From Scyliorhinus canicula (taxonomy: Eukaryota): 64,000 nucleotides of DNA. Where the stretch lies: the NCBI RefSeq assembly GCF_902713615.1, contig NC_052164.1, forward strand, positions 97,363,575 through 97,427,574, read 5' to 3'. This document shows, piece by piece, positions 3,581-61,259 of the stretch; the stretch's first letter is position 1; every line of letters begins with the position of its first letter. The notes under the pieces are model-generated. The model had not been told where the DNA came from and searched no databases. It worked only from the letters and a program-made list of their open reading frames with translations. The translations under genes were made by a program, and so were the position numbers.

Positions 3581-4022
3581 AAAGAACAACAAAGAACAGC
3601 ACAGGAACAGGATCATGATGCCGGTATAAATTAAAACCTCTGCACTTCCGGGGTCTGTATCCCTCTATTCCCACCCTCCTCATATATTTGTCAAGGCACC
3701 TCTTAAACATCGCCATCATATCTGCTTCCACCGTATTCACCAGCAGCGAGTTCCAGGCACTTGCCACCCTCTGTGTAAAGAAACTTGCCTCGCACATCTC
3801 CTTTAAACTTTCCCCCTTCACCTTAAACCTATGTCGCCTGGTAATTGACTTCCACCCTCGGAAAAAGATCCTGACTATCCACTCTGTCCATGCCCTTCAT
3901 AATTTTGTAAACCTCCAACAGGTCACCCCCTCAACCTCCTTCATTCCAGCGAAAACAATCCGAGTTTGTCCAATCTCTCCTCATAGCTGATACGGTCCAG
4001 ACCAAGCAACATCCTGGTAAAG
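3581..4022 (-). mobile_element. CR1-type LINE 3' fragment
   Basis: FFTQRVASAWNSL...FKRCLDKYM is the CR1 ORF2 C-terminal motif. Confidence 0.75.
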
Positions 4023-4380
4023 CACTGGGACTAAAAGGATTAAATCAGGAGTGCAGGTTACACAGTCTAGACATGTATGGAATATTATGGAATGTTCTAA
4101 TCCTGCTGTTTAATGCAATTGAAGGATTTGAGAGGAAAGATAGATAGAAACAATTCCCTCACCTGGCGACAGTCGAGAACAAGGGTGCATGCTCCCCAAG
4201 GAAATCTAAAAGTATCTATTAATCTGTCAGTCAACCATAAATAAACCAATCACCTAGGCCAGGAGTTAAACATCAGCATCAGTGTACTTATGTCTGTGGC
4301 CGAGACCTTAGCAATACCATGTAAATGTTTTCCATTACAGGTCTCACGCGACTGCAGGAGAAGGTGATAAATACCAAAAA

Positions 4381-5022
4381 ATGTCCATTACATTTTACGG
4401 CTGGGAGGCCATCAATGAGGATAAAGGGCATCTGAAACCGGGGCAAAAGCTTCAAGATGGTAGAGGCTATACCATGTACCACGGGACCCACAAAAACAAT
4501 GCCGCAAAAATAATATGTTCAGGGTTTGTACCATCCGTAGATGGACTCCTGGGTCCAGGGGTATACATTAGCAGAGATAGGAATAAAGCAAGGGTGTACC
4601 CAAAGACAGTACCGAAAACTGACAGAGTGGTCTTCAAGCTGAAAGTTAGAGTTGGAAAAGTGAAGAAAATAGACAAGGATAACCATCCCCTGCAAAAAAC
4701 CTGGCATCAGCAAGGCTACGACTGTGCCTGGGTCCCACCAAATTGCGGGATGCAGTCCATTCCGAGTCAAAAAGAAGAAGACTGCGTCTGGGACCCCAAA
4801 CGGATAACGGTGGTGGATATCGCCTACGCAAATGACCTGGTCAAGAAAGATCTGAGGAAGCTGATAAGCGAACAGACGATGGCCAAGGAAGCGGATGTCA
4901 AGGATCAATGCAACGTCTGTGGCCACCGACAATATTCATCTCATGAAATTCAGAAATGCTGGGGTTGTGAGACGGTCGTCTGCCCTTTTATGAGCAAACA
5001 TGTTTGTAAAAAAGGGAGATAG
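4381..5022 (+). CDS. gig2: Gig2-like PARP-fold ADP-ribosyltransferase-domain protein, long type with C-terminal Cys/His finger (213 aa, single coding exon)
   Basis: Motifs YTMYHGT, GLLGPGVYISRD, ARVYP, VGKVKKID, HPLQKTW, GYDCAWVPP and EEDCVWDP are typical of Gig2. Splice acceptor tttccattacag ends at 4340; AATAAA at 5296-5301. Confidence 0.9.
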   Translation: MSITFYGWEAINEDKGHLKPGQKLQDGRGYTMYHGTHKNNAAKIICSGFVPSVDGLLGPGVYISRDRNKARVYPKTVPKTDRVVFKLKVRVGKVKKIDKDNHPLQKTWHQQGYDCAWVPPNCGMQSIPSQKEEDCVWDPKRITVVDIAYANDLVKKDLRKLISEQTMAKEADVKDQCNVCGHRQYSSHEIQKCWGCETVVCPFMSKHVCKKGR

Positions 5023-6896
5023 ATTTAGTGGGAGCTCTCTTTCAATCATTATTTCTGAATATTATTTGTCTCTTCAGTCCTACGCTTTCTCTTCTCTATT
5101 AATATTAAGAATATAGGAACAAGAAAAACGTCTTTACATCCAACGAGCTGTATTTTTCAGAGCTGAACCCCACTTCACCGCTTCTCACCATTTCCACCAA
5201 TTCTGTCCCTTTGCAGAAACATATTTGATTGCAGCATGGGCTCATTTCTATATTGGAATTACCTATGTCGCAGACAGTTTAACCCCTTTTGGACTAATAA
5301 ATGGGACTTTCGTTCTCAGCCCAAACTTCTAAATGTTTCATGAACACCTCCTTCACTGCCTCAGGGAGGCCGTGGTCAATGGTTGTCGCTGGATTAGTAA
5401 TGCAGACACCCGGGGTAATAATACTCTGAGGACCAGGGTTCCAATCCCACCACTGCAGATGATAAAACTTGAATTCAATAAAAAAATCTGGAATTAAAAG
5501 TCTAAGGATGACCAGGAAACCATTGTCGATTGTCGTAAAAACCCATCTGGTTCACTAATGTCCTTTAGGGAAGGAAATCTGCCGTCCATACCTGGTCTGG
5601 CCTACATGTGACTCCAGACCCACAGCAATGTGGTTGACTCTTAAATGCCCTCAGGGATGGGCAATAAATGCTAGCCCAGCCAGCAATGCCCACAATCCAT
5701 GAATGAACAAAAAAACACACATATGCACACACAACGTGGTGTATCTGTGCACACACAAACATATACAAATATATATGTACATGTATCCACACATACCCAC
5801 AGTCTTACACATACATTTTCTATTCATGTCATTCTCCCTTCTCTGCATCACAGATGTTTTTATATAGCAGATACAGGCTTGACTTGATATGTGTTGAGAA
5901 TTTCTCTCAATATTGACTATAGATCCCAATCTATCTGGATAACGATGTCTAACATCCTTCCAATAATGTACCTTTCACTACAAGCTGGTTGTTAAGCTTG
6001 CTGGTGCAGTCCTGCCAATCTTTGAGACACGGGATGTGATCCAACAGCCACGCTGTGCCCGAACAGCAGCTCGCCGTGGCGCAGCGTGGCCGATGATCCT
6101 GCTCCCGGGATCTACCCATTTCGCAACGTCTTGCGAGATCCAATGCGATCTTGCGAGATGTTGCAATGTAAATCCCGCCCAGAATGGGATCACGTTTTGG
6201 CAAATCTGCACATTAGAGCAAGGCAGTAAGCGAGACGGCACTGCGAGCATCGGGAAACACGCGGCTAAACACGCTCGCGAGGGGACCTTGTTCCCTTTTG
6301 GGAGAATCACGCCCATGGTGAGACATGGTGGGGTTGTGGCCACACTTTTTATACTATTTTGCACTTGCCACTCGAAGTGCTTGTTTGCCTATGTGGAGGA
6401 AACATACAAAGAGATACATTGAGTGCATTAACCTGTGCAAAACCACAACAAATGAACCCCTGAGAGTTTATCTTAAATATTAACTGCCATGTGGTAAGTT
6501 TTCACACTGGAAGAAATTATAAATGTAACATACATAAGCAGCAGAAGTCCTTCCCTAAAGAGTTAACAAACAAATTGTACATGCCACTAAGTTGTACAGT
6601 CCCAGGATGTTTCAGACTCAATACCCTAGTTTTCAGATGGAGTGATTCTCTGGTTGTTGTTAGCACACTGAGCTAAATCGCTGGTTTTGCAAAGCAAACC
6701 AAGGCAGGCCAGGAGCATGGTTCAATTCCTGTAACAGCCTCCCCAAACAGGTGCCGGAATGTGGCGACTAGGGGCTTTTCACAGTAACTTCATTGAAGCC
6801 TACTCGTGACAATAAGCGATTTTCATTTTCATTTCATTTCAATTGCTTAATCAACCTTGGGGTAGGAGGAGAAACATCAGCTCGGGTCCTGCTTAT

Positions 6897-14195: not shown

Positions 14196-14843
14196 ATGGC
14201 GTTGACATTTTTTGGATGGGAGACTATTTATGACAATAATCATCATTTGCTGTCAAATCAGGAACCGAAGAATGGGACAGAATACATCATGTACCATGGC
14301 ACCACAGTCAGTAATGCAAGGTCTATCATACAAACAGGCTTCAGGCAATCAAGCAAGGGCATGCTAGGCCCTGGAGTCTATATTAGCAGAGACAAAGAGA
14401 AAGCTAAGAGGTATCCAATTAGTAGTCCAAGCGATAGAGTAATCTTAGTGTTAAAAGTACAAGTCGGAAAGGTCAAGATAATAGATAAAGAAAATCATCC
14501 TATGGCAAAGACTTGGTATCAACAGGGGTATGATACAGCTTGGGTCCCTCCCAACTGTGGGATGAGAAATGTTCCCAGTGGATTGGAGGAAGACTGTGTT
14601 TGGGATCCACAAAGAATCCGGGTAGTCGATGTAATAAATTCCCCCAATCCGGGAACAACACAGCAGTTGAAAGATTTGCTTCAAGCAAGATCGTACAGTA
14701 ACCCTGCGCCTGAGTCAGAGACAGCTGAGCACTGCGGTGTCTGTAAAAGCACCATGGCGCCTCCTCACCTGTTGCAGACCTGCTGGGGGTGTGGACAGAC
14801 CATCTGCCCTTTTATGGGAAGTCATTTCTGCGAGTCGAATTGA
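14196..14843 (+). CDS. gig2: Gig2-like ADP-ribosyltransferase-domain protein, long type with C-terminal Cys/His finger (215 aa)
   Basis: Motifs YIMYHGT, GMLGPGVYISRD, AKRYP, GYDTAWVPP and GLEEDCVWDP. Acceptor ttttcttcgttacag ends at 14163. Confidence 0.9.
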   Translation: MALTFFGWETIYDNNHHLLSNQEPKNGTEYIMYHGTTVSNARSIIQTGFRQSSKGMLGPGVYISRDKEKAKRYPISSPSDRVILVLKVQVGKVKIIDKENHPMAKTWYQQGYDTAWVPPNCGMRNVPSGLEEDCVWDPQRIRVVDVINSPNPGTTQQLKDLLQARSYSNPAPESETAEHCGVCKSTMAPPHLLQTCWGCGQTICPFMGSHFCESN

Positions 14844-27373: not shown

Positions 27374-27492
27374 ATGGCTGATTACAGAGATATGTGGGCT
27401 GAAGAGGATGGGCCTGGTTTTGTTCCACCAAAGCTTCAAAGCTATATAGCACCAGAGAATGGCAATAATGTCAATTCCTTTCTCAAACATGG
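27374..27492 (+). pseudogene. Truncated short-type Gig2 pseudogene with the 60765-like N-terminus
   Basis: Reads MADYRDMWAEEDGPGFVPPKLQSYIAPENG, then a 33-bp in-frame deletion removes the MYHGT segment. The sequence runs into a GC-rich repeat at ~27491 and the rest of the gene is missing. Confidence 0.85.
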
Positions 27493-27622
27493 GGCTGGAT
27501 TCTCCGACCCCCCCCGCCGGGTCAGAGAATCGCCAGGGGGCAGCGTCAATCCCGCCCCCACCAGCCGCCGAATTCTCCGGCACCGGATATTCTGCAGGGG
27601 ATGGTAATTGCGCCGCACCGGT

Positions 27623-28434: not shown

Positions 28435-31009
28435 ATGGCTGATTACAGAGATATTTGGGCTGAAGAGGATGGACCTGGTTTTGTTCCAACAAAACTTCAA
28501 AGTTGTACAGCACCACGAGATGACAAGATCTATGTGATGTACCATGGAACCCGTGCCAGTGATGTCGATTCCATTCGCAAAATTAGTTTCCAACAATCCA
28601 AAGGTGGCATGCTGGGCCCTGGAGTCTATGTCAGTAGAGACATTAGGGAAGCCAGCAGATATCCACTGGGTCTGCGGGACAGTCAGAAGGCTGTGCTTAA
28701 GTTAAGAGTGAATGTGGGAAAAGCCATAAAGATAAATTATCTTTTTCTTAAAATAATTTTTATTGGAATATTTTGAAAAATATATATCAACAAAACAATA
28801 ATAACAATAATAATAATAAACACCCCCGGCATCCGTAACAACGCATATAACAAACCCCCCACACCCCCCCAACTCCAATAAACAACAGAATAAATTAACA
28901 ATAAGCAAATTAACTTAAACACTATCCCCCTAAACCCCCCATCCCCTTTTCCCACCCTCCCCCCCGGGTTGCTGCTGCTGACCTAGTACCTTGTCGTTGA
29001 GCCAGAAAGTCGAGGAAAAGCTGCCACCTCCTAAAGAACACTTGTACCGACCCCCTCAGGGCGAACATAACCCTCTCCAACTTAATGAATCCCGCCATGT
29101 CATTAATCCAAGTCTCCACACTCGGAGGTCTCGCATCTTTCCACTGCAGCAAGATCCTCCGCCGGGCTACTAGGGACGCAAAGGCCAAGACATCGGCTTC
29201 TTTCGCCTCCTGCACTCCCGGCTCCACCCCAACCCCAAATATCGCGAGTCCCCAGCCTGGCTTGGCCCTGGATCCCACCACCCTCGACACCGTCCCCGCC
29301 ACCCCCTTCCAGAACTCCTCCAGTGCCGGACATGCCCAGAACATATGGGCATGGTTCGCTGGACTCCCCGAATACCTGATGCACTGGTCTTCGCCCCCAA
29401 AGAACCTACTCATCCTAGATCCGGACATGTGGGCCCGGTGTAGCACCTTGAACTGGATGAGACTAAGCCTCGCACATGCAGAGGAGGAGTTCACCCTCTC
29501 CAGGGCGTCCGCCCATGTCCCCTCCTCAATCTGCTCCCCCAGCTCCACCTCCCACTTAGCCTTCAGCTCCTCTACCGATGCCTCCCCCACCTCCTGCATT
29601 ACCTGGTAGATGTCAGACACCTACCCATCCCCGACCCACACCCCCGAAAGCACCCTATCCCTTACCCTCCGCGGGGGCAGCAAAGGGAACCCCTCCACCT
29701 GTCGTCTAGCAAACGCCTTGACCTGAAGGTACCTGAACATATTCCCCGGGGGGAGCTCAAACCTCTCCTCCAGTTCACCAAGGCTCGCGAACCTCCCGTC
29801 AATAAACCGGTCTCCCAACTTCCTAATGCCCGCCCTGTGCCACCCCAGGAACCCACCATCCATGTTCCCTGGGACAAACCGGTGGTTCCCCCGCAGCGCG
29901 GATCTTCCACCGAGCCCCCCACTTCCCCCCTGTGTCGCCTCCATTGCCCGCAAATTTTTAGGGTGGCTGCCACCACCGGGCTCGTGGTGTACCTCGTTGG
30001 AGGGAGCGGCAACGGAGCCGTTACCAGTGCCTTCAGGCTCGTGCCTCCGCAGGAAGCCATCTCCATCCTTTTCCACGCTGCTCCCTCCCCCTCCATTACC
30101 CACTTGCGTACCATAGAGACATTAGCCGCCCAATTGTACCCAGAGAGGTTGGGCAGCGCCAGCCCCCCTCTATCCCTGCCCCGCTCCAAAAAGACCCTCC
30201 TGACCCTCGGAGTCCCGTGCGCCCAAACAAATCCCAGAATGCTGCTGTTCACCCTCCTAAAAAGGCCCTCGGAACAAAAATGGGGAGGCACTGAAACAAA
30301 AACAAAAACCTCGGGAGCACCGTCATTTTAACGGACTGTACTCTACGCGCCAACGACAACGGCAGCATGTCCCACCTTTTAAATTCCTCCTCCATCTGCT
30401 CCACCAACCTAGTAAAATTGAGCTTGTGCAGAGTCCCCCAGCTCCTAGCCACCTGAACCCCCAGGTACCTAAAACTCCTCACTGCCCTCTTTAGCGGGAG
30501 CCTACCAATCCCCTCCTCCTGATCTCCCGGGTGCACGACAAACAGCTCACTCTTGCCCAGGTTCAATTTATATCCCGAGAAACTCCCGAACTCAGCAAGA
30601 ATCTCCATCACCTCCGGCATTCCCCCCACCGGGTCTGCTACATACAACAGCAAGTCATCCGCATACAGCGACACTCGGTGCTCCTCCCCACCTCGCACCA
30701 AACCCCTCCACCTCCTTGACTCCCTGAGAGCCATGGCAAGAGGCTCTATAGCTAGCGCAAAAAGCCAGGGGGACAGGGGGCACCCCTGCCTCCTCCCACG
30801 GTGGAATAAAGATAAATTATCAAGGACACCCATATTAGAAGACATGGCGTAGTCATGGCTACGACACTGCCTGGTGTCCTCTCAATTGTGGGATGGTACC
30901 AAGTGGGCTGGAGGAAGATTGTGTCTCAGATCCTACCAGAATAAAATTTGTTGAAGTCCTTCGCCCAAAACGTTGGGGGGACCCCGGGGCCTACCCTGAT
31001 GAGTACTGA
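28435..31009 (+). pseudogene. Short-type Gig2 pseudogene split by an L1 insertion, with a premature stop
   Basis: 5' half spans 28435-28741. 3' half resumes at ~30822 (HPY*KTWRSHGYDTAW...YPDEY). CAG>TAG stop at 30836-30838; original stop at 31007-31009. Confidence 0.9.
28742..30805 (-). mobile_element. 5'-truncated L1/Tx1-clade LINE (ORF2 reverse transcriptase and C-terminal part, frameshifted)
   Basis: Motifs RQGCPLSP, LYADDLLLY, SGYKLN, FRYLGV, GGLALPN and HMFWACP. Perfect 16-bp target-site duplication ATAAAGATAAATTATC at 28726-28741 and 30806-30821. Confidence 0.93.
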
Positions 31010-34000
31010 ATTAAATAGTGGTCAGCGAAAACAGAGGTGTGGGGTGGTGGGATGGGCAGGGGATTTCTACAATTATACTCTGTCTTGGGCTAGGGAGGGA
31101 AGGTTCTACCATGTTCTTGCTATTGAGGTTGGCCTTGTGTGAACAACAGGGGATAATGGGATTGAGTTAAATGTGAAGCTCCACAATCACAGAGCCTGAC
31201 AACACCCATTGGAGTAATTGTTTTGCAGACTCAGCTCCTGGCAATGAAACCTACGCGCCAAGGGGCACAAATGAGAATATTGGTCACTGACGCCATCATA
31301 TCCCATTCTCAGTGCCCCTCAGCTCCCGGATCAGAGTCTCTAAGCTCATACCTCATTGTATAGATTCACACATGAGAAATGGTTATACCAACACAGATGA
31401 AGCAGAGTCTCAGTGTGAGTCACTGCCGTCAGTAGAGGAACAGGGTATTTTGGGGAGAAAAAAGTCGGCTGATGTCACTAAAGGCATTGCAGAAAACTCA
31501 GAGGTGAAGGTAAATCTAACCTTCTTTGAAGGACAATTTGTCAAAGCAATCACTTTGTATCATTCACTTTGTGATGTGAAAAACCATTGATTTGTACTTT
31601 TATACAAACCAAATAAAATTATTGACTGTCCTTTTCTGTAGTAAACCAATAGTAATGGAATGAAATGGACACTAAAAGAATTGTGCTTGTCCAATCTGTA
31701 AAATAAAATATTCTGTTTAACATAAAAGGTCTTCCCTGGATGAGTGTGGCTCCAACAACACTCTAGATGTTGGACAGCATCCAGGACAAAGCAGCCCGCT
31801 TAGTTCACACCTCTTCCATTACCTTTAACATTCACTCCCTCCATCACTGACGCACAGTGGTTGCCGTGTGTACCATCTGTAAGATGCACTGCTGCAACTC
31901 AACAAGGTTTCTTCAAAAGCACCTTCCGAACCTACAACATTTACCACATAGAAGGACAAGGGCAGCAGCTACAACGTCGCCTCCAAGTCACTCACCATCC
32001 TGACTTGAAAATGAATCATTGTTCATTCACTGTCACGAGGTCAACGTCCTGGAATTCCCTTCCGAACAGCACCTTGGGTGTACCTACACCACATGGACTG
32101 CAGTGGCTTATGAAGGCAACTCACCACCACCTTCTCAAGGGCAATGAAGGGATGGGCAATAAATGCTGCCCTGGTCAGTGATGCCAACATCCCGTGAGCA
32201 AATGTGTGGTGTGGGGTGACGGTGCACTTTTACTCCCTCTGCTTGTTGGAAATTAATGGAGGTTAATCGCTAAGCGATGACCCTAATGCTTTGTTTTCAC
32301 CTTGTTACAGTGTTGCTGAGAATGTAGGCAAGTACGCACAGTACTGAGGAGAATGTCCGCAAATTAGGATTGTAATTGTCTCACTGAGAGGAAAGCTCCG
32401 ATGGACCCTTCACTCGGTGACCAAGCTGGGGTTTGTCAACTTGTTGAGTGGGGATGGGGCAGATGTCCAACTTGAGATTTAGCCAACTTGACAGGAAGTA
32501 AGGCAAGCTGGGAAACAGAGGATCAATAGACGGAGACAGGAAGCTGCAAACAATTGGGCAGCACGGTAGTACAATGGTTAGCATTGTTGCTTCATAGCTC
32601 CAGGGACCCGGGTTCGATTCCTGGTTTGGGTCATGATTGTGCGGAGTCTGTACATTCTCCCTGTGTCTGCGTAGGTTTCCTCTGGGTGCTCCGGTTTCCT
32701 CCCACAAGTCCCAAAAGTTGTACTGTTAGGTAATTTGAACATTCTGAACGCTCCCTCTGTGTACCCGAACAGGCGCCTAAATGTGGCGACTAGGGGCTTT
32801 TCACAGTAACTTCATTGCAGTGTTAATGCCAGCCTACTTGTGACAATAAAGATCATTATTATTATAAACGTGCTGACTTAAAATGGAGGCTGAAAATGGG
32901 GCTGGAATATCGAGGCTGCAGACGTAGCCACAATAGATGACTTCTAAATGTTTGCAAAGGTGTAACCCCCCCTGATTGTACAGTCTACAAAGCTGATGGT
33001 CAACCCATCCCTCAACCATGGCATCCTCCATCCATTCACACCCGCACAGTCCCTTGAATCCCACAGCTCAACATCCTATAGTCTGCAGCTACAATATCCC
33101 GCAGCCCAAATGAATCCACATCCTCACTAAATCACACCTCCACTTTTCCACAGGTCCATTAAGTACAGGCACAAGTACGGCGGCAATTTTCTTGCGTCTG
33201 AGGAAGGAAGTTGGGGGTTCAAGGCCCACACACGAGTCTCCTGGCTGACACAGAGCAGGCCTGAAATGAAAGGGAAAATGTTGGAAAATCTCAGCAAGTC
33301 TGGCAGCATCTGTAGGGAGAGAAAAGAGCTAACCTTTCGCGTCCGATGACTCTTTGTCAAAGCAGGCCTGAGTGAGTGTCATCATTTTGATGAGATAGGG
33401 CCAAGTGCAGACTTTTCTGCCGCTCAAGATTTTCCAGCGTCCAATTAGATGAGGCAGATTTTTACCTTTTCTCCATTAACCTGACTTTCTTCCATACCCA
33501 TTGACACACTTACCTAACGAAAATCTACTTCAGTCTTGATAACTCCACTTGGAGTTTGATCAATGATCTGATCGAGGTCTTTAAAATCTTAAAAGAAATT
33601 GTTAGGTTAGATATGGTCATTCTGATGGAATGCCATCAACATGAAACATTTACTCTGTTGCTCTCTCCACAGGTGCTGCATCTCAGTTTTTCCAGCATTT
33701 CCTACGTTTATTTTAGATTTCCAGTGTCTGCAGCAGTTTGCTCTCGCCTTGAGATTTCCTGATGATCTGACCAACCTTTGTGCCTCAACCAAGACTAAAC
33801 ACAGAGAGCAGTTGAAACTGATCTTGAGCGGCAACGCAAAAACAATGACTGGAATTCTCCGGCCGTTGGGATTCACTGTTCCCGCTGGCAGTGCACTCCC
33901 ACCCGCAGCATTCCCAGCGGCGTGGGGTAGCTTCGATGGGAAATCGCATCGACAAGCGACGGGAATAGAGAATCCCGCCGCCAGTGAACGCCGCACAGCC

Positions 34001-38937: not shown

Positions 38938-39432
38938 ATGGCTGATTACAGAAATATTTGGGCTGAAGAGGATGGACCTGGTTTTGTTCCAATACAACTT
39001 CAAAGTTGTACAGCACCACGAGATGACAAGATCTATGTGATGTACCATGGAACCCGTGCCAGTGATGTCGATTCCATTCGCAAAAATGGTTTCCAACGAT
39101 CCAAGGATGGCATGCTGGGCCCTGGAGTCTATGTCAGTAGAGACATTAGGAAAGCCAGCAGGTATCCACTGAATCTGCATGACAGTCAGAAGGCTGTGCT
39201 TAAGTTAAGGGTAAATGTGGGAAAAGTCAAAAAGATTGATCGTCAAGGACACCCATATCAGAAGACATGGCGTAGTCATGGCTACGACACTGCCTGGTGT
39301 CCTCCCAATTGTGGGATGGTACCAAGTGGGCTGGAGGAAGATTGTGTCTCAAATCCTACCAGAATAAAAGTTGTTGAAGTCCTTCACCCAAAAGCTTGTG
39401 GGGACCCCTGGGACTACCCTGAAGAGTACTGA
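38938..39432 (+). CDS. gig2: Gig2-like protein, short type (164 aa), intact
   Basis: Motifs YVMYHGT, GMLGPGVYVSRD, ASRYP, GYDTAWCPP and GLEEDC. Acceptor AG at 38908-38909, strong Kozak accATGg, AATAAA at 40042-40047. Confidence 0.9.
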   Translation: MADYRNIWAEEDGPGFVPIQLQSCTAPRDDKIYVMYHGTRASDVDSIRKNGFQRSKDGMLGPGVYVSRDIRKASRYPLNLHDSQKAVLKLRVNVGKVKKIDRQGHPYQKTWRSHGYDTAWCPPNCGMVPSGLEEDCVSNPTRIKVVEVLHPKACGDPWDYPEEY

Positions 39433-41830
39433 ATTAAATAGTGGTCAGCGAAAACAGAGGTGTGGGGTGGTGGGATGGGCTGGGGTTTTCTACAATTATA
39501 CTCTGTCTTGGGCTAGGGAGGGAAGGTTCTACCATGTTCTTGCTATTGAGGTTGGCCTTGTGTGAACAACAGGGGATAATGGGATTGAGTTAAATGTGAA
39601 GCTCCACAATCACAGAGCCTGACAACACTCATAGGAGTAATTGTTTTGCAGACTCAGCTCCTGGCAATGAAACCTACGCGCCAAGGGGCACAAATGAGAA
39701 TATTGGTCACTGATGCCACCATATCCCATTCTCAGTGCCCCTCAGCTCCTGGATCAAAGGCTCTGAGCTCATACCTCATTATAGAGATTCACACATGAGA
39801 AATGGTTATACCAATACAGATGGAGCAGAGTCTCAGTGTGAGTCACTGCCGTCAGTAGAGGAACAGGGTATTTTGGGGAGAAAAAAGACAGTTGATGTCA
39901 CTAAAGGCTTTGCAGAAAAATCAGAGGTAAAGGTAAATCTAACCTTCTTTGAAGGACAATTTGTCAAAGCAATCACTTTGTATCATTCACTTTGTGATGT
40001 GAAAACTATTAATTGTTGTACTTAATGTTTTCTACAAAACAAATAAAATTATTGACTGTCCTTTTCTGTAGTAAACCAATAGTAATGGAATGAAATGGAT
40101 ACTAAAAGAATTGTGCTTGTCCAATCTGTGAAAAAATTCTTCTTCTTAATGTAAAAGGTCTTGCCTGGATGAGTGTGGCTCCAGCAACACTCTGGAAGTT
40201 GGACAGCATCCAGGACAAAGCAGCCCGCTTGGTTCTCACCTCATCCATCACTCCCTCCATCACCGACGCGCAGTGGTCGCCGTGTGTACCATCTGTAAGA
40301 TGCACTGCTGCAACTCAACAAGGTTTCTTCAACAGCACCTTCCGAACCTACAACATCTACCACATAGAAGGTCAAGGGCAGCAGCTACAACTTCTCCTCC
40401 AAGTCACTCACCATCTTGACTTGAAAATGAATCATTGTTCATTCACTGTCACAGGGTCAACGTCCTGGTATTTCCTTCCGAACAGCACCTTGGGTGTACC
40501 TACACCACATGGGCTGCAGTGGCTTATGAAGGCAGCTCACCACCACCTTCTCAAGGGCAACGAAAGGATGGGCAATAGATGCTGCCCTGGTCAGTGATGC
40601 CAACATCCCGTGAGCAAATGTGGGGTGTGGGGTGAGGGTGCACTTTCACTCTCTCTGCTTGGTGGAAACTAATGGAGGTTAATCGCTCAGCGATGACCCT
40701 AATGCTTTGTTTTCACCTTGTCACAGTGTTGCCGAGAATGTACGCAAGTGCGCACAGTACTGAGGAGAATGTCCGCAAATTAGGACTGTAATTGTCTCAC
40801 TGAGAGGAAAGTTCCGATGGATCCTTCACTCGGTGACCAAGCTGGGGTTTGTCAGCCTGTTGAGTGGGGATGGGGCAGATGTCCAACTTGAGATTTAGCC
40901 AACTTGACAGGAAGTAGGGCAAGCTGGGAAACAGAGGATCAATAGACGGAGCCAGGAAGCTGCGAACAGTTGGGTGGCACGGTAGCAAAATAGTTAGCAC
41001 AGTTGCTTCATCGCTCCAGGGTCCCAGGTTCGATTCTCGGCTTGGGTCATGACTGTGCGGAGTCTGTACATTCTCCCAGTGTCTGCGTAGGTTTCCTCCG
41101 GGTGCTCCGGTTTCCTCCCACAAGTCACAAATGTTGAGCTGTTAGGTAATTTGAAAATTCTGAACTCTCCCTCTGTGTACCCGAACAGGCGCCGGAATGT
41201 GGCGACTAGGGGCTTTTCACAGTAACTTCATTGCAGTGTTAATGCCAGCCTACTTGTGACAATAAAGATCATTATTATTATAAACATGCTGACTTAAAAT
41301 GGCGGCTGAAAATGGGACTGGAATATCGAGGCTGCAGACGTAGCCACATTGGATGACATCAAAATGTTTGCAAAGGTATAACCTCCCCTGATTGTACAGT
41401 CCACAAAGTTGATGGTCAACCATCCCTCAACCATGGAATCCTCCATCCATTCACACCTGCACAGTCCCTTGAATCCCACAGCTCAACATCCTATAGTCTG
41501 CAGCTACAATATCCCGCAGCCCAAATGAATCCACATCCTCACTAAATCACACCTCCACTTTTCCACAGGTCCATTAAGTACAGGCACAAGTTTTATTTTA
41601 GTACGGTGGGAATTTTCTTGTGTCTGAGGAAGGAAATTGGGGGTTCAAGGCCCACAAAAGCATTGCCTGGCTGACACAGAGCAGGACTGAGTGAGTGTCA
41701 TCATTTTGATGAGATGGGGCCAAGTGTAGACTTTTCAGCCGCTCAAGGTTTTCCAGCGACCAATTAGATGAGGCAGATTTCTACCTTCTCTCCATTAACC
41801 TGACTTTCTTTGATATCCATTGACACAGTT

Positions 41831-42682: not shown

Positions 42683-42768
42683 GAAACTGAAACTTTGAAA
42701 ATTACATTATAAAGACCAGCTGTGTGCACATCTCACTGCAGAGTTACTAGCTGAGGGGCAAGATGAGT
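42683..42768 (+). promoter_or_regulatory. Orphan ISRE-TATA promoter with mutated splice donor; its unit has no coding exon
   Basis: GAAACTGAAACT at 42683-42694, TATAAAG at 42708-42714. Donor reads AAG|ATGAGT (G>A at 42763). Confidence 0.7.
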
Positions 42769-50487: not shown

Positions 50488-50982
50488 ATGGCTGATTACA
50501 GAAATATTTGGGCTGAAGAGGATGGACCTGGTTTTGTTCCAACAAAACTTCAAAGTTGTATAGCACCACAAGATGACAAGATCTATGTGATGTACCATGG
50601 AACCCGTGCCAGTGATGTCGATTCCATTCGCAAAAATGGTTTCCAACGATCCAAGGATGGCATGCTGGGCCCTGGAGTCTATGTCAGTAGAGACATTAGG
50701 AAAGCCAGCAGATATCCACTGGATCTGCGTGACAGTCAGAAGGCTGTGCTTAAGTTAAGAGTGAATGTGGGAAAAGTCATAAAGATAAATTATCAACGAC
50801 ACCCATATCAGAAGACATGGCGTAGTCATGGCTACGACACTGCCTGGTGTCCTCCCAATTGTGGGATGGTACCAAGTGGGCTGGAGGAAGATTGTGTCTC
50901 AAATCCGACCAGAATAAAAGTTCTTGAAGTCCTTCGCCCAAAAGCTTGGGGGGACCCCTGGGCCTACCCTGATGAGTACTGA
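50488..50982 (+). CDS. gig2: Gig2-like protein, short type (164 aa), intact, apparently chimeric
   Basis: Same motifs as the 38938 gene. Acceptor AG at 50458-50459, AATAAA at 51585-51590. Confidence 0.9.
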   Translation: MADYRNIWAEEDGPGFVPTKLQSCIAPQDDKIYVMYHGTRASDVDSIRKNGFQRSKDGMLGPGVYVSRDIRKASRYPLDLRDSQKAVLKLRVNVGKVIKINYQRHPYQKTWRSHGYDTAWCPPNCGMVPSGLEEDCVSNPTRIKVLEVLRPKAWGDPWAYPDEY

Positions 50983-53184
50983 ATTAAATAGTGGTCAGCG
51001 AAAACAGAGGTGTGGGGTGGTGGGATGGGAAGGGGATTTCTATACTCTGTCTAGGGCTAGCGAGGGAAGGTTCTGCCATGTTCTTGCTATTGAGGTTGGC
51101 CTTGTGTGAACAACAGGGGATAATGGAATTGAGTTAAATGTGAAGCTCCACAATCACAGAGCCTGACAACACCCATTGGAGTAATTGTTTTGCAGACTCA
51201 GCTCCTGGCAATGAAACCTATGCGCTAAGGGGCACAAATGAGAATATTAGTCCCTGACACCATCATATCTCATTCTCAGCGCCCCTCAGCTCCCGGATCA
51301 GAGTCCCTGAGCTCATACCTCATTATATAGATTCACACATGAGAAATGGTTATACCAATTCAGATGAAGCAGAGTCTCCGTGTGAGTCACTGCCGTCAGT
51401 AGAGGAACAGGGCATTTTGGGGAGAAAAAAGACAGTTGATGTCACTGAAGGCAATACAGGGAAATCAGAGGTAAAGGTAAATCTAACCTTCTTTGAAGGA
51501 CAATTTGTCAAAGCAATCACTTTGTATCATTCACTTTGTGATGTGAAAAACCATCGATTTGTACTTAATGTTTCATACAAACCAAATAAAATTATTGACT
51601 GTCTTTTTCTGTAATAAACCAATAGCACTGGAATGAAATGGATACTAAAAGAATTGTGCTTGTCCAATCTGTAAAAAAAAAAATTCTGATTAACATAAAA
51701 GGTCTTGCCTGGATGAGTGTGGCTCCAACAACACTCTGAAAGTTGGACAGCATCCAGGACAAAGCAGCCCGCTTAGTTCTCACCTCATCCATCACCTTTA
51801 ACATTCACTCCCTCCATCACTGACGCACAGTGGCAGCCGTGTATACCATCTATAAGATGCACTGCTGCAACTCAGCAAGGTTCCTTCAACAGCACCTTGA
51901 GAACTGACAACATCTACCACATAGAAGGACAAGGGCAGCAGCTACAACGTCGCCTCCAAGTCACTCACCATCCTGACTTGGAAATACATCACCGTTCATT
52001 CACTGTCACTGGGTCAAAATCCTGGAATTCCCTTCCTAACAGCACTGTGGGTGTACCTACACCACATGGACTGCTGTGGTTTACAAAGGCAGCTCACCAC
52101 CACCTTCTCAAGGGCAATGAAGGGATGGGCAATAGATGCTGCCCTGGTCAGTGATGCCAACATCCCGTGAGCAAATGTGTGGTGTGGGGTGAGGGTGCAC
52201 TTTTACTCCCTCTGCTTGGTGGAAACTAATGGAGGTTAATCGCTGAGCGATGATTCGAATGTTTTGTTTTCACCTTGTCACAGTGTTGCCGAGAATGTAC
52301 GCAAGTACGCACAGTACTGAGGAGAACGTACGCAAATTAGGATTGTAATTGTCTCACTGAGTGGAAAGTTCCGATGGATCCTTCACTCGGTGACCAAGCT
52401 GGGGTTTGTCAGCCTGTTGAGTGGGGATGGGGCAGATGTCCAACTTGAGAGTTACCCAACTTGATAGGAAGGATGGCAAGCTGAGACTCAGAGGATCAAT
52501 AGATCGAACCGGGAAGCTGCAAACAGTTGGACAACATGGTAGCACAGTGATTAGCACTGTTGCTTCACAGTGCCGGGGTCCGCGGTTCAATCCCTGGCTT
52601 GGGTCACTGTCTGTGCGGAGTCTGCACGTTCTCGCTGTGTCTGCGTGGGTTTCCTGCGGGTGCTCCGGTTTACTCCCACAAGCCACGAAAGACGTGCTGT
52701 TAGGTCATTTGGGCATTCTGAACTCTCCCTTTCTGTACCGACAAATGCCGGAATGTGGTGACTAGGGGATTTTCACAGTAACTTCATTGCAGTGTTAATG
52801 TAAGCCTACTTGTGACAATAAAGATTATTATTCTTATAAACATGCTGATTTAAAATGCAGGCTGAGAATGGGGCTGGAATATCGAGGCTGCAGACAACGC
52901 CACATTGGTTGACATCTAAATGGTTGGAAATTGGCAGGGGATAAGGTATAACCTCCCCTGATTGTACAGTCCACAAATCTGGTGGTCAACCATCCCTCAA
53001 CCATGGCGTCCTCCATCCATTCACACCTGTACAGTCCCTTGAATCCCAACATGTTGAAGCTCAACATCCTATCGTCTGCAGCTACAATATCCCACAGACT
53101 GAATGATTCCATATTCTCACTAAATTGCACCTCCACCTTTCCACACGTGCGTTAAGTACAGGCACAAGTCTTATATTTAGTACA

Positions 53185-60764: not shown

Positions 60765-61259
60765 ATGGCTGATTACAGAGATATGTGGGCTGAAGAGGAT
60801 GGGCCTTGTTTTGTTCCACCAAAGCTTCAAAGCTATATAGCACCAGAGAATGGCAGGATCTATGTGATGTACCATGGAACCTCTGCCAGTAATGTCGATT
60901 CCATTCTCAAAAATGGTCTCCAACGATCCAAGGATGGCATGCTGGGCCCTGGAGTCTATGTCAGTAGAGACATTAGGAAAGCCAGCAGATATCCAATGGA
61001 GCTGTATGACAATCAGAAGGCTGTGCTTAAGTTAAGGGTGAATGTGGGAAAAGTCATAAAGATTGATTATCAAGGACACCCATATCAGAAGACATGGCGT
61101 CGTCATGGCTTCGACACTGCCTGGTGTCCTCCCAATTGCGGGATGGTACCAAGTGGGCTGGAGGAAGATTGTGTCTCAAATCCTACCAGAATAAAAGTTG
61201 TTGATGTCCTTCCCCCAAAAGCTTGGGGGGACCCCTGGGCCTACCCTGATGAGTACTGA
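60765..61259 (+). CDS. gig2: Gig2-like protein, short type (164 aa), intact
   Basis: Same motifs as the 38938 gene. Acceptor AG at 60735-60736, AATAAA at 61862-61867. Confidence 0.9.
   Translation: MADYRDMWAEEDGPCFVPPKLQSYIAPENGRIYVMYHGTSASNVDSILKNGLQRSKDGMLGPGVYVSRDIRKASRYPMELYDNQKAVLKLRVNVGKVIKIDYQGHPYQKTWRRHGFDTAWCPPNCGMVPSGLEEDCVSNPTRIKVVDVLPPKAWGDPWAYPDEY

What the first reader, a model, noticed from the sequence alone, without database searches (positions are those of the whole stretch)
4909..5007. C-terminal C-x2-C-x7-H-x4-C-x2-C-x4-C-x5-H-x-C finger on the long Gig2 paralogs
Seen: identical spacing of eight Cys/His residues in CNVC...HVC (4381 gene) and CGVC...HFC (14196 gene), with divergent intervening residues. 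The motif is absent from the short type. Established: the AN1 zinc finger is C-x2-C-x9-12-C-x1-2-C-x4-C-x2-H-x5-H-x-C. Inference: a two-zinc AN1-like variant with one His ligand relocated, possibly a targeting or nucleic-acid/ubiquitin-system module fused to the ART domain.
Basis: partly seen in the sequence, partly recalled or inferred. Interest (0 to 1): 0.7.

Follow-up and report, generated by a model that had tools for sequence, protein, structure and literature searches.

The report
Undescribed zinc finger on shark Gig2 enzymes
Two interferon-type antiviral ADP-ribosyltransferase (Gig2) genes of a catshark end in a 33-residue module with eight invariant Cys/His residues, conserved from sharks to teleosts and salamanders; it matches no named zinc-finger family, and I found it described in no paper.

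Summary
Window 4909-5007 encodes C177-C209 of a 213-aa Gig2 protein with the spacing C-x2-C-x7-H-x4-C-x2-C-x4-C-x5-H-x-C. The second long paralog carries the same spacing at 14733-14831. The short paralogs lack it.

The motif is not chance. It occurs nowhere else in six frames and in none of 100 shuffles. 82 of the 120 listed homologs (sharks, coelacanth, lungfish, caecilians, salamanders, ray-finned fishes) carry it at the extreme C-terminus. The eight ligands are the only invariant columns in a 65-sequence tail alignment.

The "AN1-like" reading holds only as a resemblance in spacing. No Pfam finger model, AN1 included, reaches its threshold. The AN1 sixth-ligand position is Met/Gln/Leu in 86 of 90 tails and never His or Cys. 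Fold searches give only weak hits spread over MYND, FYVE, PHD, RING, B-box and AN1. An exhaustive profile search of 1.84 billion proteins found the finger only on Gig2/PARP-type proteins.

My reading: a Gig2-specific two-zinc module, probably cross-braced, tethered by a helix to an apparently active H-Y-E ART domain, and acting as a target- or partner-docking unit. Zinc binding, the zinc-ligand topology and the function are all untested.

The scan holds only first-reader notes on this same window, none on other DNA.

The parts
4339..4340 (+). AG of the splice acceptor just upstream of the start codon. The whole coding sequence, finger included, lies in this last exon.
   Evidence: The sequence reads ttccattacag|gtctcacg. 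An RNA-like contig (run X1, record 3) follows the genome from 4339 onward, and 59 of its letters do not lie on the laid stretch. Depth is about zero at 4010-4277 in two of the four runs.
4381..5022 (+). Coding sequence of long Gig2 paralog 1 (213 aa plus stop), of the gig2o/p type.
   Evidence: ORF list. It is 90% identical to a Scyliorhinus torazame protein and 51-57% identical over its full length to zebrafish gig2p, coelacanth, lungfish and salamander proteins.
4381..4830 (+). PARP-type ADP-ribosyltransferase domain (about residues 1-150), with invariant H34, Y62 and E132/E133.
   Evidence: Pfam PARP scores 30.3 bits against a cut-off of 26.7. Invariant columns are listed. AF2 pLDDT exceeds 90. 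Foldseek finds PARP4, PARP1, PARP2 and tankyrase ART domains at E 2e-6 to 1e-4.
4834..4893 (+). Predicted linker helix (residues 152-171) between the ART domain and the finger.
   Evidence: DSSP on the whole-protein AF2 model gives helix H152-171. The 10-residue block means are 98 for 151-160 and 87 for 161-170.
4909..5007 (+). The finger, C177-C209. Knuckle 1 is C177/C180 (4909-4920). H188 is at 4942-4944. Knuckle 2 is C193-W-G-C196 (4957-4968). C201 is at 4981-4983. H207-x-C209 is at 4999-5007.
   Evidence: Small beta hairpins are predicted around both C-x2-C knuckles.
14196..14843 (+). Coding sequence of long Gig2 paralog 2 (215 aa plus stop).
   Evidence: ORF list. It is 51% identical to paralog 1.
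14733..14831 (+). The second copy of the finger (C180-C212 of paralog 2), with the same spacing.
38938..39432 (+). Short Gig2 paralog (164 aa) without the finger. It serves as a comparator.
   Evidence: It falls in the fingerless clade of the ART tree.
50488..50982 (+). Short Gig2 paralog (164 aa) without the finger.
60765..61259 (+). Short Gig2 paralog (164 aa) without the finger.

Best explanation
The last ~35 residues of the long (gig2o/p-type) Gig2 proteins form a small metal-stabilised domain of their own kind. It has eight invariant Cys/His ligands for two zinc ions, a nearly invariant Trp inside the second C-x2-C knuckle, and a few conserved hydrophobic residues (I/V200, F/L/Y203) that would form its mini-core.

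The most likely wiring is interleaved (cross-braced), as in AN1, PHD, FYVE and MYND fingers. Zinc A would be held by C177, C180 and C201, with H188 from the first loop taking the place of the missing sixth ligand. Zinc B would be held by C193, C196, H207 and C209.

The domain hangs on a ~20-residue helix behind a compact PARP-type ART domain that keeps the H-Y-E residues. I infer that the domain does not catalyse. Instead it docks the enzyme on its target or partner, more likely a protein than bulk nucleic acid, so that the interferon-induced ART modifies the right substrate.

The module is old. It was already present in the common ancestor of sharks and bony vertebrates, and it defines one of two ancient Gig2 subfamilies. 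The other, fingerless subfamily sits next to it in the same shark gene cluster.

Shown here: the motif, its invariance, its restriction to Gig2, and the lack of a match to named families. Inferred: zinc binding, the wiring and the function.
For: - **Motif.** It is exact in both long genes and absent elsewhere in the window.
- **Conservation.** 82 of 120 listed homologs, from sharks to teleosts and salamanders, carry it at the extreme C-terminus, with only the first loop varying (5-10 residues). The eight ligands are the only invariant columns of 65 tails, and W194 is above 90%. Per-position table: W 89/90, I/V 90/90, F/L/Y 90/90, K/R206 79/90.
- **Cytosolic context.** There is no signal peptide and the enzyme is of cytosolic type, so Cys/His invariance points to metal binding rather than disulfides (sequence).
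- **Fold prediction.** AF2 predicts beta hairpins around both knuckles, with finger pLDDT 61-81. The nearest ESM Atlas models are other Gig2 proteins with the same tail fold (TM 0.61 and 0.55, rmsd 1.4-2.2 A over 40-42 residues), so two predictors agree on the fold.
- **Fold class.** All weak fold hits are cross-braced two-zinc fingers: FYVE, PHD, MYND, B-box, RING and AN1.
- **Restriction to Gig2.** A profile search of 1.84 billion representatives gave 11 hits. Eight carry a PARP domain. The other three are fragments that read as pieces of Gig2 proteins, though no Pfam family was found in them. Some hits are fused gene models.
- **ART domain.** It has a PARP fold with invariant H34, Y62 and E132/E133.
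- **Phylogeny.** In the tree of 173 ART units, a fingerless clade of 71 (SH-aLRT 89) holds the window's short genes and a lamprey protein. The other 102 units are mostly finger-bearing.
- **Expression.** RNA-like contigs from four studies cover the whole ORF including the finger, with no joint listed inside it.
- **Interferon context.** Zebrafish gig2o and gig2p are induced by IFN-phi1 (bioRxiv 10.1101/693333).
Against: - No metal measurement exists.
- Model coordinates could not be inspected, so the wiring rests on analogy. Two other wirings fit the spacing equally well.
- The function has no direct evidence. A docking test of the finger against its own ART domain gave no verdict.
- The strict H-x4-C and C-x4-C spacings would also be natural for sequential, knuckle-like sites.
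- In the 2013 family paper zebrafish gig2N/O/P/Q were not induced by poly(I:C) in ZFL cells, so the antiviral role of the long type is less certain than that of the short type.
Confidence: 0.6

Rival explanations
1. It is a divergent member of the AN1 zinc-finger family. It would have the same interleaved two-zinc fold, with the sixth ligand moved to the first loop and the last loop shortened by three residues.
For: The spacing C-x2-C-x12-C-x2-C-x4-C and the terminal H-x-C fit the AN1 consensus quoted in PMC3305619. A hydrophobic residue precedes the fifth Cys, as I recall for AN1 (from memory). AN1 models do appear among the weak fold hits: PDB ranks 44 and 50, AFDB rank 9, Atlas TM 0.37.
Against: Pfam zf-AN1 is not matched by the window's tail at E<=10, nor is it among the 25 most-matched families of 65 tails. 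The tail profile finds no AN1 chain in the PDB at E<=10. The sixth-ligand position is never His or Cys in 90 tails, and the C5-H7 distance is 5 rather than 8. MYND, FYVE and PHD score as well or better in every fold search.
Confidence: 0.1
2. It is two sequential zinc sites, not interleaved: a Nanos-like CCHC knuckle (C177, C180, H188, C193) followed after two residues by a second CCHC site (C196, C201, H207, C209). The two-residue spacer would be LIM-like. The unit would act as an RNA-binding element that brings the ART to viral or cellular RNA.
For: The first four ligands have exactly the spacing of the second Nanos finger, C-x2-C-x7-H-x4-C, as seen in the alignment to PDB 5kl1_B. zf-nanos is a recurrent weak Pfam hit (8 of 65 tails, best E 0.002). 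All spacings from H188 to C209 are rigid, as expected for chelate loops. A C-W-x-C-G knuckle with Trp recalls retroviral nucleocapsid knuckles, where the Trp stacks on bases (from memory). Other antiviral PARPs (PARP12, PARP13, PARP7) use zinc fingers to bind RNA (established knowledge).
Against: AF2 puts C193-x2-C196 at the tip of one beta hairpin, the usual geometry of a knuckle whose two Cys hold the same metal. The zf-nanos scores (13.9-15.9 bits on this window's tail) are far below the 27-bit cut-off. Finger net charge varies from -7 to +7 and is -1 in the second shark paralog, which is unlike a general RNA binder. Fold hits are to cross-brace fingers, not knuckles or LIM domains; there is one CRP1 (a LIM-domain protein) hit at E 1.5.
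Confidence: 0.2
3. The finger is not a targeting module. It is an intramolecular structural or regulatory element that packs on its own ART domain, for example gating the NAD+ or substrate face, or it is an oligomerisation element.
For: The finger always follows an ART unit at a nearly fixed distance (~25-30 residues), through a conserved helix with a nearly invariant Leu (L158). The whole-chain AF2 pTM is 0.74.
Against: The docking test of ART(1-172) against finger(173-213) with two Zn gave no verdict (score 0.03), which is not evidence either way. pLDDT drops in the stretch between helix and finger (block means 66 for 171-180 and 61 for 181-190), as for a tethered module. The fingerless subfamily has the same ART core and needs no such element.
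Confidence: 0.12
4. The Cys/His pattern does not bind zinc. It could form disulfides or an Fe-S site, or be a conserved but metal-free peptide.
For: No metal data exist. AF2 and ESM models carry no metal.
Against: The protein has no signal peptide and belongs to a cytosolic enzyme family. Two invariant His among six Cys, two C-x2-C knuckles and an H-x-C pair are typical zinc ligation. Eight ligands invariant across more than 400 million years (established divergence time of sharks and bony vertebrates), with 31% mean identity elsewhere, fit structural metal sites.
Confidence: 0.04

Closest known systems
AN1-type zinc finger (Pfam PF01428; ZFAND proteins)
   Same: Eight Cys/His ligands in about 35 residues for two zinc ions. 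The spacings C-x2-C, about 12 residues, C-x2-C, x4, C and the terminal H-x-C are the same. The interleaved fold class is predicted for both.
   Different: The sixth ligand (C5-x2-H) is absent; that position is Met/Gln/Leu. The last loop is 3 residues shorter. There is an extra invariant His four residues before the third Cys. There is no HMM match, and the fold similarity is no better than to other finger classes.
Nanos zinc-finger domain (Pfam PF05741), second CCHC finger
   Same: The first four ligands have identical spacing, C-x2-C-x7-H-x4-C.
   Different: The second half (C-x4-C-x5-H-x-C) has no Nanos counterpart. The score is far below the Pfam cut-off. The predicted hairpin geometry favours interleaved rather than sequential sites.
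Generic cross-brace two-zinc fingers (FYVE, PHD, MYND, B-box, RING)
   Same: There are two beta-hairpin knuckles, and a ligand lies four residues after the second knuckle. These families are the only structural neighbours found, although the hits are weak.
   Different: The third ligand 'pair' is a single Cys. The fourth pair is H-x-C. All TM scores are 0.40 or less and all E-values are 0.24 or more. None of the families' signature residues are present.
Zinc-finger-bearing antiviral PARPs of amniotes (PARP12, PARP13/ZAP, PARP7)
   Same: The architecture and logic are the same: an interferon-linked ART of the PARP superfamily joined to small zinc modules that select the target (established knowledge).
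   Different: Those fingers are N-terminal CCCH RNA-binding fingers with one zinc each. Here there is a single C-terminal eight-ligand module of a different pattern, on a minimal ~150-residue ART.
Gig2 family (Zhang et al. 2013, PMC3617106); zebrafish gig2o/gig2p
   Same: The window's long genes are full-length orthologs or paralogs (51-57% identity). The family is a known interferon- and virus-induced, non-amniote ART family.
   Different: The family paper describes only an N-terminal PARP-like part and a conserved C-terminus with no known domain. It contains no mention of cysteine or zinc. The finger-bearing and fingerless split is not described there.

Membership tests
zf-AN1 (PF01428) | Match to the Pfam family model at or above its gathering score | tested here: not met
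   There is no zf-AN1 row for the window's tail at E<=10. zf-AN1 is not among the 25 families most often matched by 65 tails at E<=1.
zf-AN1 (PF01428) | Ligands 5 and 6 as C-x2-H, then x5 to H7 (consensus in PMC3305619) | tested here: not met
   The position C201+3 is M51/Q26/L9, with single K, T, E and I, in 90 tails and is never H or C. The C201-to-H207 distance is x5 rather than x8.
zf-AN1 (PF01428) | C-x2-C-x(9-12)-C-x(1-2)-C-x4-C at the start and H-x-C at the end | tested here: met
   The window has C-x2-C-x12-C-x2-C-x4-C...H-x-C. In homologs the C2-C3 gap is 10-15 residues and is 12 in 58 of 90.
zf-AN1 (PF01428) | AN1 fold as the best structural neighbour | tested here: not met
zf-nanos (PF05741) | Two CCHC fingers, C-x2-C-x12-H-x10-C and C-x2-C-x7-H-x4-C (the first spacing is from memory), and a match to the family model | tested here: not met
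   Only the second spacing is present. The scores are 13.9-15.9 bits against a cut-off of 27.
Cross-brace (interleaved) two-zinc finger class | Four ligand pairs, with pairs 1+3 and 2+4 each sharing a zinc | tested here: inconclusive
   Pairs 1, 2 and 4 are present, and pair 3 is a lone Cys. Hairpins are predicted at both knuckles. Only weak fold hits to this class were found.
Zinc-binding domain in general | Stoichiometric zinc bound by the conserved Cys/His | not testable with these tools
   It needs ICP-MS or a PAR assay on purified protein. The invariance of all eight ligands is indirect support only.
PARP catalytic domain (PF00644) / Gig2 family | Family model match, PARP fold and H-Y-E-type residues | tested here: met
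   The score is 30.3 bits against a cut-off of 26.7. Foldseek hits PARP4, PARP1 and PARP2 at E about 1e-5 to 1e-6. H34, Y62, E132 and E133 are invariant in 67 sequences; their assignment to the triad is by motif inspection.

The most novel reading that the evidence does not exclude
The tail is the founding example of an unnamed zinc-finger family with a new ligand arrangement: a cross-brace finger whose third ligand pair is reduced to one Cys and completed by a His from the first loop. It would have been invented once in early jawed vertebrates. It would serve as the substrate-selecting module of an ancient antiviral ADP-ribosyltransferase lineage that amniotes later lost.
Probability: 0.35. 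Interest if true: 0.6.

Novelty: new variant of a known kind. Interest (0 to 1): 0.45.

Why it matters
Gig2 genes are among the most strongly virus- and interferon-induced genes of fishes, yet how they work is unknown. The family paper calls everything beyond the PARP-like part a region with no known domain. A strictly conserved, separable metal module on one ancient subfamily gives a concrete handle on mechanism. Deleting or mutating it should change partners, substrates or localisation, and it can be used as bait to find the enzyme's targets. It also splits the family into two architecturally distinct lineages that already sat side by side in the shark ancestor. Finally, it adds an unclassified member to the catalogue of small two-zinc folds.

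Tried and rejected
1. **Pfam scans of the tail and of 65 tails.** They gave only sub-threshold, scattered hits: Siva, FYVE, DZR_2, zf-FCS, zf-nanos, zf-C2HC5 and zf-Sec23_Sec24. I read these as shared Cys-rich composition, not homology. The Siva hits probably come from a shared C-W-G-C-G-like stretch (from memory, not checked).
2. **Tail profile against PDB sequences.** Nothing was significant.
4. **Protein-language-model look-alike search of residues 170-213.** No usable hit.
5. **Complex prediction of ART(1-172) with finger(173-213) and two Zn.** No verdict (score 0.03, partner pLDDT 44-54). It counts neither for nor against docking.
6. **Search for decayed finger relics downstream of the short genes by tblastn of 91 tails.** The best hits lie about 680 bp past the stops of two short copies (31685-31750 and 51658-51753; best E 5e-4 for one query). 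They contain a stop codon and lack the later ligands. The fingerless clade is as old as lampreys, so a neutral relic could not have survived. I rejected these hits as chance within a recently duplicated flank.
7. **Literature searches.** The terms were Gig2 with zinc, zinc finger, cysteine and ADP-ribosyl. No paper in the held library mentions the finger. Subscription journals are not covered.
8. **Model coordinates.** They were not available to scripts, so ligand-to-ligand distances could not be measured.
9. **Profile-profile comparison with AN1, MYND, FYVE or LIM alignments.** It was not run, because no tool-supplied sequences of those families were at hand.

Full report
**What is there.** The window is a tandem cluster of Gig2 (grass carp reovirus-induced gene 2) ADP-ribosyltransferase genes, all on the + strand. 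It comes from a catshark-like genome: the best hit is a Scyliorhinus torazame protein at 90% identity.
- Two genes are "long": 4381-5022 (213 aa) and 14196-14843 (215 aa).
- Three genes are "short": 38938, 50488 and 60765 (164 aa each).
- A fourth short copy is split by a retroelement.

The stated coordinates 4909-5007 encode exactly C177 to C209 of the first long protein, CNVCGHRQYSSHEIQKCWGCETVVCPFMSKHVC. This is C-x2-C-x7-H-x4-C-x2-C-x4-C-x5-H-x-C. The second long gene has the same spacing at 14733-14831, and only 7 of its 25 non-ligand positions are identical. The short genes stop shortly after the catalytic domain and have no such tail. A regex for the motif hits only these two places in six frames, and nothing in 100 shuffles of the window.

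**Conservation.** A search with the whole protein returned 347 homologs.
- Of the 120 listed, 52 have the exact spacing and 82 have it once the first loop may be 5-10 residues. The motif always lies within a few residues of the C-terminus.
- The carriers include five shark genera, coelacanth, lungfish, caecilians, salamanders, gar, bowfin, sturgeon and many teleosts. Among them are the named zebrafish genes gig2p, gig2o and DreN.
- In an alignment of 65 distinct tails the eight Cys/His residues are the only invariant columns, while mean column identity is 31%. The Trp inside the second knuckle is above 90%.
- A per-position table over 90 tails gives the refined pattern C-x-[LVI]-C-x(5,10)-H-x-[IVL]-[QE]-x-C-W-x-C-x3-[IV]-C-x-[FLY]-x3-H-x-C.

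The protein has no signal peptide and belongs to a cytosolic enzyme family. Invariant Cys/His therefore most plausibly mean structural zinc, with two ions for eight ligands. This is inference; no tool can measure metal.

The Gig2 tail shares its first five ligands and its terminal H-x-C. The tests of membership fail, however.
- Pfam's zf-AN1 model does not match the window's tail even at E<=10. It is not among the 25 families most often touched by the 65 tails.
- A profile of the tails finds no AN1 chain among all PDB sequences. The only recognisable weak hit is the second Nanos finger, which has the same C-x2-C-x7-H-x4-C spacing.
- The position where AN1 has its sixth ligand is Met, Gln or Leu in 86 of 90 tails and never His or Cys. 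The following loop is three residues shorter.

AlphaFold2 models of the tail (pLDDT 64 overall, 68-78 in the finger) and of the whole protein (finger 61-81) show small beta hairpins around both C-x2-C knuckles. Foldseek and VIA-align find no significant neighbour. The weak hits are spread over FYVE, PHD, MYND, B-box, RING and AN1, that is, the whole class of interleaved two-zinc fingers. In the ESM Atlas the nearest models are other Gig2 proteins with the same tail fold (TM 0.61 and 0.55, rmsd 1.4-2.2 A). Next come MYND at 0.40, FYVE at 0.38 and AN1 at 0.37. The resemblance to AN1 is therefore real at the level of spacing, but it is not evidence of membership.

**Is it found elsewhere?** An exhaustive HMMER search with the tail profile against 1.84 billion representative proteins gave 11 hits at E<=0.001.
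- Eight carry a PARP catalytic domain. The other three are fragments in which Pfam found nothing, but which read as pieces of Gig2 proteins.
- Two hits are gene models fused with neighbouring genes.
- One fused model from another shark strings together long-1, long-2 and a short gene in the same order as in this window.

At this sensitivity the finger exists only behind Gig2 ART units. Some teleosts have ART-ART-finger proteins (P0002, P0004, P0128).

**Anatomy of the host protein.**
- Residues 1-150 form a compact PARP-type ART domain: Pfam PARP above threshold, pLDDT above 90, and Foldseek hits to PARP4, PARP1, PARP2 and tankyrase.
- His34 (H-G-T), Tyr62 (G-x-G-V-Y) and Glu132/133 are invariant in 67 sequences. 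By motif inspection these look like an intact H-Y-E triad.
- A predicted helix (152-171) leads to the finger. Confidence dips between helix and finger, as for a tethered module.
- The whole coding sequence lies in one exon behind a splice acceptor at 4339/4340.
- Contigs of four RNA-like public runs from four studies cover about 4340 to 5470-5540 without any joint listed inside the ORF. One contig leaves the genome exactly at the acceptor. The finger is thus part of the expressed message, with the caveat that the runs' RNA nature is a guess by the tool.

**Evolution.** I built a maximum-likelihood tree of 173 ART units cut from all fetched proteins. It separates a fingerless clade of 71 units (SH-aLRT 89) from 102 units that mostly carry the finger. 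The fingerless clade holds the window's three short genes, a lamprey protein, and gar, bichir, sturgeon and frog proteins. The finger state changes seven times on the tree, mostly through N-terminal units of two-unit proteins, truncated models and one teleost subgroup. Both subfamilies were therefore present before sharks and bony vertebrates split. In this shark they still lie side by side, whereas in zebrafish they are on different chromosomes (chr 5 for gig2o/p, chr 21 for the classic cluster; PMC3617106). The tree is unrooted, so gain and loss cannot be told apart.

**Mechanism.** Three wirings fit the spacing.
1. Interleaved: {C177, C180, H188, C201} and {C193, C196, H207, C209}.
2. Sequential, Nanos- or LIM-like: {C177, C180, H188, C193} and {C196, C201, H207, C209}.
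3. Nested: {C193, C196, C201, H207} inside {C177, C180, H188, C209}.

I favour the first (about 55%). The second C-x2-C sits at a predicted hairpin tip, and every structural neighbour, however weak, is a cross-brace finger whose ligand four residues after the second knuckle pairs with the first knuckle.

For function I commit to a target- or partner-docking module for the ART, by analogy with the zinc fingers of PARP12, PARP13 and PARP7 (established knowledge). I lean to protein rather than bulk nucleic-acid recognition, because the finger's net charge ranges from -7 to +7 among orthologs and is +4 and -1 in the two shark paralogs. A test of whether the finger docks on its own ART domain gave no verdict.

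On induction the papers differ. Zebrafish gig2o and gig2p are induced by IFN-phi1 in one study (10.1101/693333), but they were not induced by poly(I:C) in ZFL cells in another (PMC3617106). ISRE-like cores (GAAANNGAAAS) are enriched in the window, 10 found against 1.9 expected. They include sites 3 kb upstream of long-1 and 1-2.6 kb upstream of long-2. This is consistent with interferon control but was not tested further.

**Novelty.** The genes and the family are known and annotated. The finger is not. The family paper speaks only of a conserved C-terminus without known domain and never mentions cysteine or zinc. A 2025 preprint on gig gene structure does not mention it either. No paper in the held library links Gig2 with a zinc finger, and Pfam has no model for it. 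Subscription journals could not be searched. I class the finger as a new variant of a known kind: a small two-zinc finger, probably cross-braced, with an unusual ligand set. Interest is moderate.

Noticed in passing
window 28435-28737 and 30809-31006 (+), with 28922-30845 (-) between them: There is a sixth Gig2 copy of the short type. Residues 1-101 and 99-164 are separated by about 2 kb that carries reverse-transcriptase-like ORFs on the opposite strand (YADDLLLY motif). The gene is therefore disrupted by, or carries in an intron, a LINE-type insertion. A further fragment (residues 1-43) lies at 27374-27508.
   Followed up: partly
window 1315, 11600, 13096, 34784, 42683, 47242, 57519 and others: ISRE-like cores GAAANNGAAAS occur 10 times against 1.9 expected (0 of 100 shuffles reach 10). 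The perfect GAAACTGAAAC recurs 3.2-4.1 kb upstream of three short genes; a fourth copy, at 42683, lies about 7.8 kb upstream of the next gene. Other sites lie upstream of both long genes. These are likely interferon-responsive promoters, with a 5' UTR exon and an intron before each coding exon.
   Followed up: partly
P0121 (672-aa gene model from another shark): This is a fused gene model that strings long-1, long-2 and a short Gig2 in the same order as in this window. The cluster order is thus conserved among sharks, and automatic annotation merges the genes.
   Followed up: partly
P0010 (Heterodontus francisci, isoform X3, 176 aa): This is a predicted isoform of the long-1 ortholog that ends just before the finger (…KEKVKGY). 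It hints at a finger-less splice form. No listed joint lies inside the catshark ORF in the four runs laid; these were contigs only, and 35 more joints were not shown.
   Followed up: partly
P0127 (989 aa) and P0002/P0004/P0128: P0127 is a Gig2-PXA/PX (sorting-nexin-like) fusion model that loses the last two finger ligands and is probably an annotation artefact. P0002, P0004 and P0128 are teleost proteins with two ART units followed by one finger.
   Followed up: no
window 4892 and 4971: Two variants appear in RNA-like runs of the same species label. C>T at 4892 gives A171V in the linker (one run). G>T at 4971 gives E197D at a non-ligand finger position (two runs). A run labelled as a second organism shows 10 substitutions in the ART part and none in the 99-nt finger.
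   Followed up: no
window 31685-31901, 40282-40317, 51658-51753: Paralogous 3' flanks of the short genes lie about 680 bp past their stops. They contain a Cys-rich pseudo-match to the finger (ACPICKKKNSD*HKRS…). I judged this a chance match within a recently duplicated flank.
   Followed up: yes
window about 2400-2940 and 5480-5750: These are interspersed repeats with very high summed contig depth in all four runs (1e4-1e5 against 10-40 for the gene). They bound the transcript-covered region of long-1.
   Followed up: no
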